Positions 24,027 to 30,921 of a DNA stretch of 64,000 nt are shown in pieces. The notes under the pieces are model-generated. The model did not search any database. It saw only the letters and a list, made by a program, of their open reading frames with translations, and was not told the origin of the DNA. The stretch lies in NCBI GenBank assembly GCA_001179505.1, contig CDMY01000338.1, positions 1 through 64,000 on the forward strand. The letters are read 5' to 3'. Positions within the stretch are counted from its first letter, which is position 1, and every line of letters begins with the position of its first letter. A program made the translations under genes and the position numbers. The stretch comes from Vitrella brassicaformis CCMP3155. Taxonomy: Eukaryota > Protista > Chromerida.

Positions 24027-27000
24027 TCACATATCACTTTTCCTTCTCGCTGAGCATGCGCCGAGAGAGGAGCGACGCCGCTTATCCTGCTGTTGCCGCC
24101 GCTGCTCCACAGAAGGCATCTGCACAATACACAGTACACACACAAACATGGTGAAAGACCTCACTGATGTGATATGGACACACACACATCCGTACCGGCA
24201 GAGTGCTAAGATACGAGGGCACCTGGCCCTGTGTGGCGGCGACCAACTCGTGCCTGCAGACATGGACACAACAAGGATACGCACAGCCCCTGCTGCGTGC
24301 CCACCCATGACATGTGTACGCACCGGTAGTCGGCCCATGTGTGTGCCGTCACGCCATAGATGTTGAGCCGCTCCGCCACCGACGCCTCCACGCTCCTACT
24401 CCAAAAGTCGAACTCGTCAACCGACATGACCAACAACAGCTGCACGCCGCACAACCAGATACACACCACACCACATGTGTGTTGGAACCCATCCATCCCA
24501 AAGCTGTTTTTGGCCGCTCACCTTGGGCAGTTGGGCCAGGTGTGCGAGGACCCTGAGAGTCCGTGTGTCCCGCAGCCTCGGCCCATCGATGCCGTGCACC
24601 ACCAGGGCAGTGGTGGCCTGTGACGCTGCCACACACTCGCTAAACACCTGACGTGACGCACACAACACACCCAGACCACACAAGGCACATATCTCTTCTC
24701 TCTAGTGTGATTTCTCTCTCGTGTCGCTGAGCTGACGCACCTACCTACCTGTACTATCTCTTTGAGGGATCTGCCCCGGGCTTCTGCCGCCTTGCTTGCT
24801 ATGTCCTGCACACCTGCGAAGGCATTGGGCGTCTCCATGAACCGCAGCAACGGCGCCCTCAGTGGCTCGACAGCGTCCAGACGGACGTCATGGCCGTAGA
24901 GCACCAGCCGGCTGGAATCGCTGACCGATAGCATGGACGACACACACACGAACGAATCAGCATGAGGTGGTAGTGGTCTGTCTGGCCGTTGCTTGGGGGG
25001 TTTCTCCTCACTCACCTGAGGCATCGTCTGTCAAACTTATCTAGCAGGGCCTGCTTGGACCCAATGCCGCTCACACACAGGGAGAAACCGGCGACAAGAG
25101 CCTCCTTCCAACGGCCGAAGTCAAGACATGCTCGGCTGAATATCTGCAGCCAGTCAACGGTCACACACACACACACAGGGGAAACAGCCAGGCCCTCACA
25201 CACAAGGGAAACAGCCCTCCACGGGACCCGCCATTTTGCACACACCCATGGCCTCGTCCTGACCTGCTGTTTGTCCGGCTCTTGTTCGACCGGCATGGCC
25301 AGAAGCCGCTCCGCAACCCACTGCGGACTGTACTCCTCGGCGCCACTCTCCCCTGCCCCACGACGACCACCACGACCATCACCATCACCAGCAGCGGCAG
25401 CGGCAGCAGGACCAGTCGACCCTCCACGCGTAACGCGTCCGCCACCTGCACCCCTGGTGTGCCGCGCCGCCTTGCTGCCGCTCTTGCGAGGCTGGTCGGG
25501 TATCGTCTTGCCTGTCCTGACGGTGGGGAGCTTCTTCTTGGCGGCCGGGAAGGGGTGGTAGGGTGGCGCGGGATGAGAGGCTGCTGCTGCTGCTGCTGGC
25601 ACTTGCGATGGCGATAGGACGTCGGCACTGGCCTGACCCTGGACACACATAAGGATGCATGATGCGCGTCAAGTGTTTGTTTGTCGTGTGGTGGATTGTG
25701 TGTGGGTATGGCGCTGACCTTGGTTTGAGAGACAAAGAGAGGCGGCTCCTCCTCGGCTGCTGCAGGCACCTGATCGTCCCTGATGGCCACCTCCTCGCCG
25801 CCCTCCATGTCTACATCCATCATGTCCGATTGCCGCTCCCGGCCCTCACCCTGCCCGCCTTGTGGATGCACCACCACTGGCTGATCCACGCCACTGTCCT
25901 CACCTCCCATCCCCTCGCTGCTCGTCGCCTGGCCGTCCTCTCTGGCCATGCCCCTCTTGCCCTTCCTCCCTCTCGGCTGCAGTGGCTTGCTGTCGGGGCT
26001 GTCGGCAGCGGGTGGTGGGTGCTCCTCCTCGGTCTGGTGTCTGCTGCGGCCGGATCGACGGGCGGAGCGTGGCCCTTTGGTCGACCAATAGCCGCCGTCG
26101 AGGCCGTCGACTCTGGCCCCCGACGACGGGAGGTTTTCTGCAGGCGGGGGGCTGGCAGGCACAACTGCCTTTGGGGCATCCGCGGGTGCCGCTGCTGCTG
26201 CTGCTGCTGCTGCAGGGGGGAGAAGGGGAGGGATGGATGGGCCAGGAGGGGGAGGGAGAGAGGGCGGCTGTGGCTGTGGCTGTGGCTGTGACTGTGGCTG
26301 TGAGTGGGTGTATTTCTTGGCCTTCTTTCGGGTGCGAGAGGGGCCGCTGGTGAGCTTGCGGCTCTTGGGCTGGTGGAGAAGCGCGGCGAACTGGTCCTTG
26401 CTGGCTGCGTGTGTCGGACAGAGGAAGCCCCTGACCACCTGACCCGGCGTCTTTTCATAGTAGAACTGAGCAGAGAGAGAAAAGGGCAGAAGGGCAACCA
26501 CCAGAATGAATGAACGACAGCCACATCACATCCACACACTCTCACTCACCCACTCACTTACCAGCAACACATCCCCCGCATCTCTGAGGCATGACGCGTG
26601 GTAGGCCACCCGGCAGTGTGGCCAGCTGCACTGGATTGGCGCGCCGACCCCCTTGCAGCCGCAGGTGTGGCAGGTCTGCTTCCACCGAGAGGCCGGCACC
26701 TTGGCCACATCCACCACCACATGGCCCTGCTCCCCATCGCGACGCAGCCAAGTCTCGGGCACCCACAAGGCGCACCGGTGATGTGCCCACCGCCCGTCAT
26801 CCGTCGGCACCAGCGGAGGGTGCCCCTCGCGCCAACAGAGGACACACTTCATGGGCTCCTCTGGGGCGGTGGGTGAACAGCTGGCCTGCGCCTCTCTGTC
26901 TCGTCGATGGCTGCACGCGCGGCAGATCCATGGGGGGCCGTCTTCTGTCGGCTTGGTGGTGAATCCATAGCACTCGTCGTGTACCCGTGTGCCGCACCCG

Positions 27001-30000
27001 CCGTCGCAGAAGATGATGTTCTCTCCCTCAGAGCACTCGTAGCTGTCGCATATGTCGCACGGCACGAGGTCGTCGTCGATGACGCGACCACTCGAGTCCG
27101 TGTTGGCCTCTGCAAGCTTCTTGGGGCAGTAGAAACAGATGTCGAGGGGCAGCTGGCCGGACAGCGATGGCGATGGCGATGGCGACGGTGCTCGGGGCCT
27201 CTTCTTGGCCTTGGGCTTGGGCTTGACGAGGTCGACGGCAGCCGCAGCAGCGGCAGCGGCAGCAACAGCGGTGGGCCGCCGCTCGCGCACCGTCCTCTCG
27301 CGGATGTATGGCCATTTCGGGATCACCCTGCTGGGCCTGCCCCCCTTCCTCTCACCCTTGGCGGCCCTCCCTCCCCGGGGCAGAAGCCACATCGGCTCCG
27401 GCGGCTGCATTTTCTCATTCTGCATCCTCTTCGCCTGCCTTTGGGGCGAGATGCGCCGGCTGACCCTCCTGATGTTGCGAACCAGGAAGGGCAGCAAGCG
27501 CCCTGGAAACTGACGGCGACTGAGGCAGGGCGCCAGCCGTGTAGCTGCGGGTGTGGGAGACTTGTGGGCGGGCCTGGTGCGCCGAGGGGGCCGAGGGGGT
27601 GGTGGTGGGGGGGCTGCCGGCGGAGAGGGAGAGGGCGAGGGAGCGTGTCGCTCGCCGAGAGGTGGCAGGGGTGGCGCGGTTGCACGTGGCTGCTGAGCCG
27701 GCCGACCGCTGGCAGGAGCTCCTGGCAAGTTGAAGGGCACAGGAGACAGGCCACCCTGAAACATACACACACAAAGACAAACGAGAGAGAGAGAGAAGGT
27801 CACCCAGTAGCCTGTCTCAGCGTCACCTCCTCTCTGCATTCATTTCATTCCCCTCTCATTGTCCACGTACCCGAAGCGAGCTGCGCCCTGACCGCGATGC
27901 GTCTCTCCGGCCGGCCTTCTTGCGCACCACGGCCCCACCACCACCACCACCACCAAAGTCGCCCTCTTCCTCGACAATCTCAAGCTCATCATCATTATCG
28001 TCATGGGCCGTGATGCCGTGATGTCGCTGATGTCGCTTCGGCGAGGTAGGCATGCGTGGCGTGGGGCGTTTGAAGGGGGTAGGTGGCGACATGAGACGCT
28101 GCTGCTGCTGCTGCTGGGTGCCCACTCGGGGCGGTGGGCTGCGGTTGACAAAGGGCGTGGTGGGAATGAGAGGCTGATCGGGGAGAGGCGAGAATAGAAC
28201 AAGCCCGCCTGTCTGTCTGTCTGTCTGTCTGTGTGAGTGTGTACCTGTCTCTTGACAGGCGAGCCCGACGGAGATCCTGCCGATCCCCGTGGGCGGCGAG
28301 ACGAAACATCTCCGCAACGCTGCAAGCATGCAGGCAATGCAGATGAAGCAACACTCAGTTGCTCGTATGTATAATGCGGGAGTGCTGCTTGTAAAATACG
28401 GCACGCTCCGTCTGCTCTGCTCAGCCCACCTTACTTACCTCTCTGCCCTGCGCGACGCCGATATCGACACGCCTGACACAATGCTCCGGCCCCCGCTGCT
28501 GCACCCTCACTGCCCCCAACAACTGCTGCAGGCTCCAAAGGGTCCCATGAAAGCGGAGCCGCACCAGGTGCGGGTCGACCTCGACCTGCCCCTCAAGGCC
28601 CCCATGCCGCTCCTGCCGGTCCACCACGTGCCCCGCATACGACTGGAACAGCTCGAGCATCGCGATGCTCTCCCGCAGGTCCGACGGCATCAGCCGATGC
28701 ACGAACGAGATGGCCTCCAGCCGTCTCATTCCCCCCTGCGTCACTTCCAGCGTGTCCAGAAGCTGCACAGTGGGTGGGCCGCTGCGGGGAACTTCGCCAG
28801 CCGGGCGATGATAGCGCATCATCTCAGCGGCCAGGGGGAGAGCGCCTGCGGGTGTGAAGCGGTCGGAGTCGTCCGGTCGCAAGATGAGGGTCTTCATGAT
28901 CTCGTAGAGCGTGTACATCAGCATCTGTGCGAGGGCTGAGGGGCTCTTGCCCTCGCACAGCTTGGCGGCCTCATCGTTGATCTCGGCCTCCCTGTTCCTC
29001 TGGGCAGACTGCGCTTGCGAGACCGGCCGTCCTCCGCCCTCCTGCTTGTACAGAACAGACCGCCTGGCCACGTTATCCTTGAGATGACCCCACGCCCTGT
29101 GCTGCTGCCGGCTGGCCTGGGAGCCTGGGGCCGCTTCAGGGCGCGCGGCAGTCTCCAATAGACCCAGGTAGACACGAACCCTCCTCAAGTGCTCGACATG
29201 CGGCCACTGCTGCCTCTGCCCAGCTGTAGGGGGCTGTCCTGATGCTGATGCCGATGCAGCAGCAGCAGGAGCAGCAGCAGCAGCAGCAGCAGCTGAGGTC
29301 TGTGGCTGTCTGTTGGCCATGGGGGAGGGGGAGAGGGCCGGGATGGATGGGCGAGCCGGGCGAGAGGGTGTTGCGGGAGGGTGTCCGCTCTGGGTGGGGG
29401 GAGGGAGTGAGGGTCTTGTGTTGGGTGTGGGTGTGTGGGGGCCGAGCTCTCGATCGAGGAGCTCGCGCACTCTCTGGGTGAGCTTGCCAAGGTCCTGCAG
29501 TCGCTCATCGAGCTGGTCCAGGTTCATGACGCGACGGGTGCGATCGTCCAGCATGCGATCGATAGCCGTCCCAGATGGAACCGACCCATCTAACGACACA
29601 CAGGCACACACACATAGACACACACGGCCAGATGCACCCACTCCTTCCTTCTGTGCACATGTTATGTTGCTCTGCTCGTCTCTCTCACCGTACCGTCAGG
29701 GTAGCACTTGCGATGGATCTGCTGCAGGAGTTCCCATTCCTTGGCCTTCCACCTATGCCAGAAGAGCTCCAACTCCAGGAACACCAGCATGCCCAGCCCC
29801 TCCCTCTCCCGCTGCATCCGAAACCGAGCCATGTGCCGCGGCATGCTCCTCCGCAGACACGCCCGATCATCATCCCTTCGCCCGACCAGCGCAAGGCGCG
29901 TCCTCGCGTGGGGCTTGTCCTTCGTCTGCTCGATCACATAGTCCGCCTGCACTTCGGTGAGGGTGTGTCGGGCGTATAGGGGCGCCAGGGCCACCTCGCC

Positions 30001-30921
30001 CTTGACGATCCGCTCCCTCTTGTGGTCATTGGGGCAGTCGGTGAGCGACGCACAGGGATGGAAGGTGACGTAGGTGGCCAGCAGGTGCCACAGGGTGCGA
30101 CAGAGGTCGGTGAGGGTGGTGGTGTCGGCGATGGCCTGGAGGTGGCTCGGCGGCAGGGTGAAGGGCAGCATGGAGGGGTCGGTAGCGATCGCCGGGATGA
30201 CGAAACGGTCCATAAATATCGACATCCTCTCCATATTGAGCACCTTGGGCTGAAGGGCCATAACCGCGGGCAGAAGCATGCCGAGAGACCTGTTGCAGCT
30301 GCCCAGCACCAGCACCACAGACACCCCCTCCTGCCGCAGGCCCTGACAGACGGCAGACAGCCCGCCGATGCCCTGCGATGGCTCCGTCACGCCCGCCCGG
30401 CTGTCTGCGTCGGGCACAATGATGCCCACGATGTGCCTCTTGCCATCCCCCAGACCCCGGCTCCCCCGAACAGCCGTCGTGACATCCTGCTGCCAATCCA
30501 GCCAGTCGGTGAGGAAGGGCGGCGTCACAATAGGAGAGCCGGCAGGCAGCCCCTCCTCGAGCAGCCCGCTAAGGGCAATCTGCCGGTCCGCCATCGACCT
30601 ATCTTCGTCGCTAAAGATGGCCACGGCCGCAACGATGCCGGGGTGGTCCGACGCTGCATGCGGCAGTAGCTGTTGCTGAAACTGCTCCTCTGTCAGCCGC
30701 TTGCCCTGGATCTCGGTCGTGCTGAAGACCATGCTTTGGATGCGCCGCATCACCCGACGCCACGTGTTCTTCTGCAGCTGGAGGAGGGCTGACTCATCTG
30801 CCCGCTGGCTCGCTATCGAGGCCGTGCACTTGAGAGGATAGATGGTCCCTGCATTGACGCTCTCAACTGCCGACGCTGGACCAGGCGACGTAGGTACTCG
30901 AACGGCAAAGCCTGGCTCCAT
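24027..30921 (-). CDS. ORC3-PZP-ORC2 fusion protein (13 exons, 1921 aa predicted)
   Basis: Exons 30921-29694, 29589-28439, 28319-28245, 28173-27871, 27755-26562, 26465-25719, 25638-25264, 25143-25016, 24920-24749, 24647-24522, 24439-24324, 24253-24196, 24119-24027. All introns are GT-AG, all phases match, total 5766 nt with no internal stop. ORC3-like, PZP and ORC2-like motifs occur in that order. The last exon is the least certain. Confidence 0.72.
24196..25143 (-). other. ORC2: ORC2-like domain
   Basis: DFGRWKEALVAGFSLCVSGIGSKQALLDKF (ORC2 pattern F.KW..QL..GFNI.LYGLGSKR.LL..F), LVLYGHD, ALVVHGIDGPRLR..LAHLAQLPK, LLLVMSVD, VTAHTWADYRHE (ORC2 pattern TTY.PY.EE). Confidence 0.8.
26400..27065 (-). 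other. PZP module (PHD1, Zn knuckle, atypical PHD2; BRPF/JADE/AF10-type)
   Basis: CDICDSYECSEGENIIFCDGGCGTRVHDECYG..WICRAC; CVLCW..LVPTDDGRWAHHRCALWVPET; CHTCGCKGVGAPIQCSWPHCRVAYHASCL..FLCPTH (last ligands in the next exon). Confidence 0.93.
28439..30921 (-). other. ORC3: ORC3-like region (AAA+-like N-terminal part and winged-helix C-terminal part)
   Basis: IVGIIVPDADS..VSVVLVLGSCNRSLGMLLP..LPFTLPPSHLQAIAD..LTDLCRTLWHLLATYVTFHPCASL parallels the ORC3_N pattern ([48 protein letters not shown]). LRFHGTLWSLQQLLGAVR..EHCVRRVDIG parallels the ORC3 C-terminus (ARFIRAVSELELLGFIK..DHVARLTWG). Confidence 0.62.

What the first reader, a model, noticed from the sequence alone, without database searches (positions are those of the whole stretch)
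26400..27140. BRPF/JADE/AF10-type PZP nucleosome reader attached to ORC subunits
Seen: a full set of Zn ligands for PHD1, the Zn knuckle and PHD2, plus an extra CFYC just upstream. Established: PZP modules bind the histone H3 tail and nucleosomal DNA and occur in HBO1/MOZ acetyltransferase scaffolds and AF10; HBO1 complexes promote origin licensing in animals; ORC chromatin reading is normally done by the ORC1 BAH domain (BAH plus PHD in plants). Inference: origin choice here may be read directly from histone state through ORC3/2, placing a role that animals give to a separate HBO1-JADE/BRPF complex inside ORC itself.
Basis: partly seen in the sequence, partly recalled or inferred. Interest (0 to 1): 0.7.

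Follow-up and report, generated by a model that had tools for sequence, protein, structure and literature searches.

The report
PZP histone reader in ORC3–ORC2 fusion

Summary
Window 27059-26409 (minus strand, split by one intron) encodes a complete PHD1–Zn-knuckle–extended-PHD (PZP) module. All 20 zinc ligands are present. Solved BRPF1 and JADE1 PZPs match at E about 1e-24, and a confident model has only solved PZP domains as its 16 best fold matches.

The attachment also holds. A 13-exon gene (30921-24027) reproduces a public 1921-aa Vitrella protein exactly. Spliced contigs, evidently from RNA, join the ORC3-like part to the PZP exon in frame and carry on into the ORC2 exons. The only break is at a (GCT)8 repeat.

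The C-terminus is an ORC2 RecA-like domain (Pfam 85 bits) without the ORC2 winged helix. The N-terminus is ORC3-like on indirect evidence only, with no Pfam match.

The functional reading is only partly supported. A second, more canonical ORC3→ORC2 locus without a PZP lies on contig C226, so this protein is a divergent paralogue. It lacks the EPL1 domain that links BRPF/JADE scaffolds to acetyltransferases. ORC1 and its BAH domain could not be found for comparison.

I found no protein elsewhere, and no paper, with this architecture. The scan noted the same fusion before on this same DNA (s1-218425), not on other DNA.

Verdict: a real, new domain architecture whose function is unproven.

The parts
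24027..30921 (-). Whole coding region of the 1921-aa ORC3-like–PZP–ORC2-like gene. It has 13 exons: 30921-29694, 29589-28439, 28319-28245, 28173-27871, 27755-26562, 26465-25719, 25638-25264, 25143-25016, 24920-24749, 24647-24522, 24439-24324, 24253-24196 and 24119-27027's end at 24027 (stop TGA 24029-24027).
   Evidence: The joined exons translate exactly to public protein P0001. All introns are GT..AG. Most junctions appear in spliced contigs of runs X5 and X6.
28439..30921 (-). Exons 1-2, the ORC3-like region (aa 1 to about 793), with a low-complexity insert around aa 455-545.
   Evidence: No Pfam ORC3 match. Protein-language-model features place ORC3_N clusters first at 0.94 with 203 of 256 shared features, and ORC5/ORC4 clusters come only at 0.77-0.78. 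BLASTP to the C226 ORC3-like exon gives 5e-7. The C-terminal motif aligns colinearly with the ORC3 winged-helix region. Predicted pairing with the ORC2-like domain has weak support.
27871..28319 (-). Exons 3 and 4 (28319-28245 and 28173-27871), the first part of the proline/serine-rich basic linker (aa 794-919).
   Evidence: Contig X5 record 10 holds 378-379 nt between 28439 and 27755, which equals 75 + 303 nt and keeps the frame. The exons match P0001.
26562..27755 (-). Exon 5 (aa 920-1317): the rest of linker 1, then PHD1, the Zn knuckle and most of PHD2.
   Evidence: 100% identical to P0001 residues 920-1317.
27126..27137 (-). The extra CFYC (C1126, C1129) upstream of PHD1.
   Evidence: Present in the sequence. 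It is not aligned to anything in other PZPs and lies in the low-confidence part of the model.
26409..27059 (-). The PZP module proper, C1152 to H1336: PHD1 27059-26913, Zn knuckle 26846-26772, PHD2/ePHD 26672-26409. It is interrupted by the intron 26561-26466.
25264..26465 (-). Exons 6-7 (aa 1318-1691): the last Zn ligand pair of the PZP, then a 344-aa low-complexity linker. The (GCT)8 repeat at 26190-26213, where the spliced contigs break, lies in exon 6.
24027..25143 (-). Exons 8-13. Together with the end of exon 7 (from 25296) they encode the ORC2 RecA-like domain (aa 1681-1878) and a short basic tail. There is no winged-helix domain.
   Evidence: Pfam RecA-like_ORC2 scores 85.2 bits, E 5.8e-24, on P0001. 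Single exons score 31.5 and 25.3 bits. In the PDB only ORC2 chains match: Drosophila 6e-8, human 3.6e-6, yeast about 0.01.

Best explanation
Shown: the stretch encodes a complete PZP module (PHD finger, zinc knuckle, extended PHD finger) closest to BRPF/JADE. It lies in the middle of one 13-exon, 1921-aa open reading frame of Vitrella brassicaformis. The N-terminal 790 or so residues are a divergent ORC3 look-alike. The C-terminal 240 or so residues are an ORC2 RecA-like domain. Two low-complexity linkers of about 350 residues flank the PZP. The region between the ORC3-like end and the ORC2-like fold sits where other ORC2 proteins have a long disordered N-terminal region (my knowledge).

Inferred: ORC3 and ORC2 are neighbours in the ORC ring, so the two ends probably pair with each other as an ORC2·3-type module. 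The PZP would then tether that module to nucleosomes by binding the H3 N-terminal tail through PHD1 and DNA through the knuckle/PHD2 surface, as BRPF1 and JADE PZPs do. PHD1 keeps the conserved Phe-Cys-Asp strand and has acidic residues nearby.

The genome also holds a more canonical ORC3→ORC2 locus without a PZP. I therefore read this protein as a chromatin-reading paralogue. I lean, a little over even, to it forming an alternative ORC rather than acting outside ORC. It reads chromatin only: it has no EPL1 domain to recruit a MYST acetyltransferase.
For: PZP identity.

One gene: X5 record 10 (2697 nt) joins 29232-28439, 378-379 nt of middle exons, 27754-26562 and 278 nt of exon 6. X5 record 9 and X6 record 12 join exon 6 (from 26217) to exons 7-10 and 840 nt beyond. 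The spliced joints have GT..AG ends and occur only in X5 and X6, not in the DNA-like runs X2 and X7. The frame stays open through all junctions. The model equals public protein P0001.

ORC2 identity. ORC3 likeness. Predicted pairing of aa 1-420 with aa 1670-1921: weak support, ipSAE 0.58 against a best control of 0.00, runs agreeing in at least 60% of contacts, partner pLDDT at least 74. That mark was reached by 51 of 78 solved complexes and 2 of 108 mismatched pairs, and scores of 0.60 or below are weak. Because ORC2-ORC3 complexes are solved, this shows likeness only.

DNA-binding residues: of BRPF1 K383, K390 and R392 (PMC4705663), the first and third are basic here (RWK and CGCK). H3 contacts: the JADE3 F219-C-D221 strand (PMC13483916) is kept as FCD.
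Against: No single contig crosses the (GCT)8 repeat in exon 6. The two contigs only overlap by about 30 nt inside it.

The contig covering the ORC2 part has 3 times (X5) to about 7-10 times (X6) the mean depth of the PZP contigs. This could be 3' bias or an extra shorter transcript. The tool warns that contig depth cannot rank parts of a gene.

Pfam ORC3_N does not match. The single-sequence model of the N-terminus was useless (pLDDT 32).

The ORC2-like part has no room for the ORC2 winged helix. A more canonical ORC3/ORC2 pair exists at C226. No relative with this architecture was found.

In PHD1 the loop that holds H3 Ala1 in JADE3 (P-E-G) is three residues longer here. The equivalents of JADE3 D216 and N224 are not kept, and BRPF1 K390 is Gly here. 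No binding has been measured.
Confidence: 0.5

Rival explanations
1. The architecture is the same, but the protein has left the origin recognition complex. It would be a paralogue with a new function, as yeast Sir3 is of Orc1. An ORC3/ORC2-like scaffold tethered to nucleosomes by the PZP would serve some other chromatin task such as silencing, cohesion or chromosome structure. The C226 pair would serve replication.
For: A second, more canonical ORC3→ORC2 locus exists. It has an ORC_WH_C match at 1e-4, Drosophila ORC3 as its only PDB matches, and ORC2 exon scores of 37.8, 18.1 and 24.1 bits. The window copy is more divergent: no ORC3 Pfam or PDB match. It shares only about 27% identity with the C226 ORC3 over 110 residues. 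The ORC evolution survey notes that ORC paralogues often take on non-ORC roles (PMC7058166).
Against: Both ORC-like halves were kept together in one frame. The ORC2-like fold still scores 85 bits against the ORC2 family. The two halves are predicted to pair, with weak support. None of this excludes a role outside ORC.
Confidence: 0.35
2. The fusion is an artefact of annotation. ORC3-like, PZP and ORC2-like would be two or three neighbouring same-strand genes in a compact genome, with read-through RNA making them look joined.
For: No single contig crosses the repeat at 26190-26213. Contig depth steps up on the ORC2 side. Contigs across two genes do not prove one transcript, as the tool itself cautions. 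In-frame methionines exist in exon 6 (for example around aa 1490 and 1532), from which an ORC2-only product could start.
Against: ORC3-like to PZP is joined by three removed GT..AG introns in one contig, and the 378 nt between keep the frame. From the PZP to ORC2 there is no stop codon in 345 codons. The last Zn ligand pair of the PZP lies in the same uninterrupted exon that runs on towards ORC2. The contigs from both sides end inside the same 24-nt repeat with an overlap of about k-1. A shorter ORC2-only isoform could still exist alongside the fusion.
Confidence: 0.06
3. The PZP is kept as a fold but does not read histone H3. It would bind DNA only, another protein, or serve as a structural spacer.
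For: The Ala1-binding loop of PHD1 carries a 3-residue insertion. Two side-chain contacts seen in JADE3 (D216, N224) are not conserved. One of three BRPF1 DNA-binding basic residues is lost. A 21-residue linker replaces the short PHD1-to-knuckle connection.
Against: All zinc ligands and the FCD strand are conserved, and most H3 contacts in JADE3 come from backbone atoms. Every solved PZP so far (BRPF1, JADE1/3, AF10, PHF14, NTO1) is listed with an H3 complex or a nucleosome role.
Confidence: 0.12

Closest known systems
PZP domains of the BRPF1-3 and JADE1-3 scaffolds of MOZ/MORF/HBO1 acetyltransferases (also yeast NTO1, AF10, PHF14)
   Same: Same three-part zinc module with all 20 ligands. It is 34-46% identical to BRPF-type PZPs. 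The predicted fold matches 6U04, 5ERC, 8GE0 and 8GDX at target-normalised TM 0.75-0.80. The FCD strand and two of three DNA-binding basic residues are kept.
   Different: There is no EPL1/EPc-N domain before it and no bromodomain or PWWP after it, so it is not a HAT scaffold. It is embedded between ORC-like domains. It has a longer PHD1 loop and a longer PHD1-to-knuckle linker.
ORC1 chromatin readers: the BAH domain, plus a PHD finger in green plants (Arabidopsis ORC1)
   Same: A histone-reading module that is covalently part of an ORC-family subunit. PMC7058166 reports the plant PHD as gained by domain rearrangement from a non-ORC protein.
   Different: Different subunit (ORC3/ORC2-like, not ORC1), a different reader (five-zinc PZP, not BAH or a single PHD), and a different lineage (chromerid alveolate).
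The canonical ORC2·ORC3 pair of the six-subunit ORC
   Same: An ORC2 RecA-like fold and an ORC3-like N-terminal region, predicted to pair. ORC3 and ORC2 are neighbours in the ring (my knowledge of solved ORC structures).
   Different: Here they are one polypeptide, in the order ORC3 then ORC2, with about 890 residues between them. The ORC2 winged helix is missing, and the ORC3 part is too divergent for Pfam.
S. pombe Orc4 with its AT-hook domain (my knowledge)
   Same: An ORC subunit outside ORC1 that carries an appended module for choosing where ORC sits.
   Different: AT-hooks read AT-rich DNA, whereas a PZP reads the H3 tail plus DNA. The C226 paralogue, not this one, carries AT-hook-like KGRPK motifs.
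Vitrella P0011 (CEM15557.1), a RING–PZP–BRCT×2 protein of the plant BRCA1/BARD1 type
   Same: It is the closest PZP in the same genome (46% identity, E 2.1e-26).
   Different: Unrelated flanking domains. It shows that PZPs in this genome occur in several contexts (about 8 further ePHD loci).

Membership tests
PZP domain (PHD–Zn knuckle–extended PHD) | C4HC3 ligands of PHD1 | tested here: met
   C1152, C1155, C1169, C1173, H1178, C1181, C1197, C1200. All are invariant in 52 aligned PZPs.
PZP domain (PHD–Zn knuckle–extended PHD) | C2HC zinc knuckle between the two fingers | tested here: met
   C1223, C1226, H1244, C1247, invariant columns.
PZP domain (PHD–Zn knuckle–extended PHD) | Extended PHD2 with eight ligands ending in C..H | tested here: met
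   C1281, C1284, C1295, C1300, H1305, C1308, C1333, H1336. The last pair lies in exon 6. Pfam zf-HC5HC2H_2 scores 61.9 bits over positions 2-106 of 109.
PZP domain (PHD–Zn knuckle–extended PHD) | The three parts fold as one globular module like the solved PZPs | tested here: met
   The AlphaFold2 model has pLDDT 81.7 and pTM 0.77. Foldseek ranks 1-16 are BRPF1, JADE1, AF10, NTO1 and PHF14 PZPs. This is a prediction, not a structure.
PZP domain (PHD–Zn knuckle–extended PHD) | Binds the H3 tail and nucleosomal DNA | not testable with these tools
   Only residue comparison was possible. The FCD strand and 2 of 3 BRPF1 DNA-binding basic residues are kept, and the Ala1 loop is 3 residues longer.
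BRPF/JADE/NTO1 acetyltransferase scaffolds | EPL1 (EPc-N) domain N-terminal to the PZP, which docks the MYST enzyme | tested here: not met
   No EPL1 match in P0001 at E up to 0.01, whereas BRPF-type hits P0021, P0024 and P0036 have it.
BRPF/JADE/NTO1 acetyltransferase scaffolds | Bromodomain and PWWP (BRPF branch) | tested here: not met
   Absent from P0001.
AF10/AF17 | PZP at the N-terminus of the protein, with an octapeptide motif and leucine zipper further on | tested here: not met
   The PZP starts at residue 1152 of 1921. AF10 is a weaker match than BRPF/JADE (2e-15 against 5.5e-25). The leucine zipper was not searched for specifically.
ORC2 | RecA-like ORC2 domain | tested here: met
   PF04084 scores 85.2 bits against a cut-off of 25.1, at aa 1681-1878. 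Only ORC2 chains match in the PDB.
ORC2 | C-terminal winged-helix domain | tested here: not met
   Only 43 residues follow the RecA-like match, they form a basic tail, and no Pfam family matches them.
ORC2 | Assembles into ORC next to ORC3 | tested here: inconclusive
   Complex prediction gave weak support: 0.58 against a best control of 0.00. Solved ORC2-ORC3 complexes may be recalled from memory. Assembly in cells cannot be tested here.
ORC3 | Match to ORC3_N, ORC3 insertion or ORC_WH_C profiles | tested here: not met
   No match in six-frame or protein scans, nor in the PDB sequence search.
ORC3 | Homology to a recognisable ORC3 | tested here: inconclusive
   BLASTP gives 5e-7 to the C226 ORC3-like exon. 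That gene has ORC_WH_C at 1e-4 (below cut-off) and Drosophila ORC3 as its only PDB matches at 0.05. Language-model features put ORC3_N clusters first at 0.94. The fold could not be predicted.

The most novel reading that the evidence does not exclude
Vitrella builds two alternative ORC2·3 modules, each possibly a single fused polypeptide. One (C226) carries a basic tail with AT-hook-like motifs. The other (this gene) carries a PZP that reads the H3 tail. Two forms of ORC would then license origins by different cues, DNA composition versus histone state, with histone-state reading built into the ORC core rather than delegated to ORC1-BAH or to a separate HBO1-type complex.
Probability: 0.18. 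Interest if true: 0.8.

Novelty: new variant of a known kind. Interest (0 to 1): 0.6.

Why it matters
How ORC finds origins in chromatin without a sequence code is an open question. The known built-in readers all sit on ORC1: the BAH domain, plus a PHD finger in plants. A PZP wired covalently between ORC3-like and ORC2-like domains would be a second, independent way of coupling ORC-family proteins to histone state, and I know of no other natural fusion of two ORC subunits. It offers a compact, testable object: a roughly 200-residue module for peptide and nucleosome binding, and a tagged 1921-aa protein for partner and localisation studies. The paralogous PZP-less locus provides a built-in comparison. 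If the protein proves to work outside ORC, it is instead a new example of ORC paralogues recruited to chromatin tasks, as Sir3 was.

Tried and rejected
(1) Pfam ORC3_N in six frames and on exons or P0001 gave no match.

(2) PDB sequence search with the two ORC3-like exons gave nothing relevant. A two-sequence profile of the C-terminal regions lost even the weak ORC3 match.

(3) AlphaFold2 on aa 1-420 with a two-row alignment gave pLDDT 32. The model was unusable, so no fold search was run on it.

(4) All three word-indexed homologue searches found no relative other than the protein itself: the ORC3-like part; the ORC2 region among long proteins; and the ORC2 region among proteins of 452-1438 aa. 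These blanks are weak evidence, because the domains are divergent and candidates must share exact 5-residue words.

(5) phmmer of the ORC3-like, ORC2-like and linker parts against the 150 best PZP proteins and 19 further cluster members found nothing at E up to 10. Of the 18 such proteins scanned with Pfam, none has an ORC domain.

(6) The search for ORC1 and its BAH domain failed. BAH, Cdc6_C and AAA_lid_10 gave no six-frame match, and no informative positive control was available. The two TIGR02928 hits followed up (of six weak ones) were a plastid-like contig and a GTPase. This check is inconclusive, not negative.

(7) The genome has three MYST loci, one EPL1 locus (C318) and about 8 other ePHD loci. 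The EPL1 hit is on none of the contigs with ePHD hits. Whether Vitrella has a true JADE/BRPF scaffold was not settled.

(8) A full PZP phylogeny against named BRPF/JADE/AF10/NTO1 was not built. The representative library carries no names, and a 170-residue tree would be poorly resolved. Only rank order and domain architectures are reported.

(9) The idea that the stretch before PHD1 (KKLAEANTDSSG) mimics the H3 tail was rejected as chance. HMMER aligned it to the H3 peptide and linker of the crystallised fusion constructs, but it has no free N-terminal alanine.

(10) Complex prediction gave only 'weak support' and is reported as such.

Joined-exon sequences were never typed into a tool. The spliced model was searched exon by exon by reference, or through the identical public protein P0001.

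Full report
WHAT IS THERE. The window is GC-rich eukaryotic DNA. The genome (72.7 Mb, 1064 contigs) is Vitrella brassicaformis CCMP3155, as named by the sources of the matching public protein. On the minus strand, an open frame at 26526-27839 carries Pfam PHD, PHD_2, zf-HC5HC2H and zf-HC5HC2H_2, all above their cut-offs. Against solved structures it matches, over the whole module, the PZP domains of BRPF1 (5.5e-25), JADE1 (6.4e-24), JADE3, NTO1 (2e-18), AF10 (2e-15) and PHF14 (2e-5).

In alignments with 8 and with 51 other PZPs, the first 18 of the 20 zinc ligands are invariant. The last pair, C1333 and H1336, is at least 90% conserved. That pair lies in the next exon, beyond a 96-nt intron. 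An AlphaFold2 model built on the 52-row alignment is confident (pLDDT 81.7, pTM 0.77). Its 16 best Foldseek matches in the PDB are all PZP domains, with target-normalised TM of 0.75-0.80 for the isolated BRPF1, JADE1 and AF10 domains.

It has no partner ligands, no counterpart in other PZPs, and lies in the model's low-confidence tail. I do not count it as a zinc site.

IS IT ATTACHED TO ORC SUBUNITS? I laid four public runs on 24501-30500. Runs X5 and X6, from two studies, hold contigs in which stretches with GT..AG ends on the minus strand are removed. Runs X2 and X7 hold the unspliced sequence. I therefore treat X5 and X6 as RNA-derived.

One X5 contig of 2697 nt contains 29232-28439, then 378-379 nt, then 27754-26562 and a further 278 nt. 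That is the ORC3-like C-terminal exon, two small exons, the PZP exon and the start of exon 6. The middle length equals 75 + 303 nt for exons 28319-28245 and 28173-27871, and it keeps the upstream and PZP frames in register. A second contig of 2140 nt, present in both X5 and X6, runs from about 26217 through exon 6 and the spliced exons 7-10, plus 840 nt more.

The two contigs end from opposite sides inside the (GCT)8 repeat at 26190-26213, overlapping by about 30 nt. This is what a k-mer assembler does at a common repeat. All 13 exons joined give an open frame whose translation is identical to public protein P0001. P0001 is 1921 aa and is named only 'unnamed protein product' or 'PHD-type domain-containing protein'.

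Two caveats remain. No single contig crosses the repeat. The downstream contig has 3 to 10 times the mean depth of the PZP contigs, which could be 3' bias or an additional ORC2-only transcript. The tool warns against reading contig depth this way.

WHAT FLANKS IT. On P0001, Pfam finds RecA-like_ORC2 at 1681-1878 (85.2 bits against a cut-off of 25.1). The PDB sequence search returns only ORC2 chains: Drosophila 6e-8, human 3.6e-6, yeast about 0.01. Only 43 residues follow, so the ORC2 winged helix is absent.

The N-terminal 790 or so residues match no Pfam family and no PDB sequence, and could not be folded. Three things make them ORC3-like.
- Language-model features put ORC3_N clusters first, at 0.90 for 1-795 and 0.94 with 203 of 256 shared features for 1-410. 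ORC5 and ORC4 clusters come far behind.
- BLASTP gives 5e-7 to an ORC3-like gene elsewhere in this genome. The C-terminal halves also align colinearly over the ORC3 motif before the winged helix.
- A predicted complex of aa 1-420 with aa 1670-1921 has weak support: 0.58 against a best control of 0.00, runs agreeing in at least 60% of contacts, partner pLDDT at least 74. That mark was reached by 51 of 78 solved and 2 of 108 mismatched pairs, and passes at or below 0.60 are weak. Because ORC2-ORC3 complexes are solved, it shows likeness, not binding.

The two linkers (aa 796-1150 and 1337-1680) are about half Pro/Ser/Ala/Gly/Thr. The first is basic.

THE SECOND LOCUS. The ORC2 profile also hit contig C226. 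That locus holds, on one strand and in this order:
- an ORC3-like gene with the textbook motifs LPDLTVMYRLYEKNPGLNMQLQDWFVAF and LQARF, Pfam ORC_WH_C at 1e-4 (below cut-off), and Drosophila ORC3 as its only PDB matches (0.05);
- immediately after it, an ORC2 with a basic N-terminal exon carrying two KGRPK motifs;
- RecA-like exons scoring 37.8, 18.1 and 24.1 bits, broken at the same profile positions as in the window gene.

There is no PZP at C226. If nothing were spliced there, the ORC3 stop and the ORC2 start would be 39 nt apart. A 121-nt GT..AG intron of typical composition would instead join them in frame. So C226 may be a second fusion, but I had no reads call left to test it. The ORC3-like part of P0001 has no other copy in the genome.

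COMPARISON AND NOVELTY. The nearest PZPs by score are multi-PZP proteins of scattered protists and algae. By identity (45-46%) the nearest are BRPF-type proteins with EPL1, PZP, bromodomain and PWWP, and a Vitrella RING–PZP–BRCT protein. P0001 has no EPL1, bromodomain or PWWP. It is a PZP of the BRPF/JADE kind, but it is not a member of the HAT-scaffold family.

Of the BRPF1 residues needed for DNA binding (K383, K390, R392; PMC4705663), the first and third are basic here. Of the JADE3–H3 contacts (PMC13483916), the FCD strand is kept, the Ala1 loop is three residues longer, and two side-chain contacts are not kept. Reading of the unmodified H3 N-terminus plus DNA is thus plausible but unproven.

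None of the 150 best PZP proteins has a region like the ORC parts. No homologue of the ORC parts was found by the word-indexed searches, which is weak evidence. The ORC evolution survey (PMC7058166) reports a PHD only in green-plant ORC1 and mentions no fusions. My literature searches found no ORC3–ORC2 fusion and no ORC-linked PZP.

WHAT COULD NOT BE SETTLED. ORC1 and any BAH domain were not found by six-frame profile scans, which had no informative positive control. The genome has three MYST loci and one EPL1 locus, and that locus is on none of the contigs with ePHD hits.

VERDICT. The functional inference is only partly supported. I read the protein as a chromatin-tethered ORC2·3-type paralogue, about even between an alternative ORC and a role outside ORC. 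It is a new domain architecture built from known parts.

Noticed in passing
G000:C226:63956-69800 (+); loci L014:7957-9717 and L013:2-3799: A second, more canonical ORC3-like gene is followed directly by an ORC2 gene, with no PZP. A candidate 121-nt GT..AG intron (L013:1098-1218, i.e. C226:67097-67217) would fuse them in frame. Otherwise the ORC3 stop and the ORC2 start are only 39 nt apart. The ORC2 N-terminal exon carries two KGRPK AT-hook-like motifs.
   Followed up: partly
window 24027-24253 (-) and L013:3584-4109: Both ORC2-like copies appear to end in a short basic tail soon after the RecA-like fold, with no ORC2 winged-helix domain. No further ORC2 exon was recognised downstream at C226 before a ubiquitin-conjugating enzyme gene.
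   Followed up: partly
window 24501-26178 compared with 26313-30500: The spliced contig covering the ORC2 exons has about 3 times (X5: 124.7 against 41.2 and 39.5) and about 7-15 times (X6: 62.2 against 9.1, 6.1 and 4) the mean depth of the contigs covering the PZP and ORC3-like exons. This may be 3' bias or an extra shorter transcript starting in exon 6.
   Followed up: no
P0011 (CEM15557.1, Vitrella; not in this window): The closest same-genome PZP (46% identity) sits in a RING–PZP–BRCT–BRCT protein, the plant-type BRCA1/BARD1 architecture. About 8 other ePHD loci exist in the genome.
   Followed up: partly
window 27060-27125 (-), aa 1130-1151: HMMER aligned the stretch just before PHD1 (KKLAEANTDSSGRVIDDD) to the histone H3 peptide and linker of the crystallised H3–BRPF1 and H3–JADE1 fusion constructs. 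This is probably chance, since there is no free N-terminal alanine.
   Followed up: no
G000:C467:32000-40000 (L021): This 71-kb contig of the assembly encodes plastid-type genes: a protochlorophyllide reductase subunit, a ClpC-like ATPase and ribosomal protein L11. It is therefore organellar or organelle-derived DNA within the nuclear assembly.
   Followed up: no
window 26179-26312, 27924-27963, 28090-28246 and 29233-29301: Simple repeats inside coding exons, (GCT)n/(CAG)n and GGT runs, and ACAG repeats in introns break the k-mer contigs. Poly-Ala, poly-Gln and poly-Gly tracts are part of the predicted protein.
   Followed up: no
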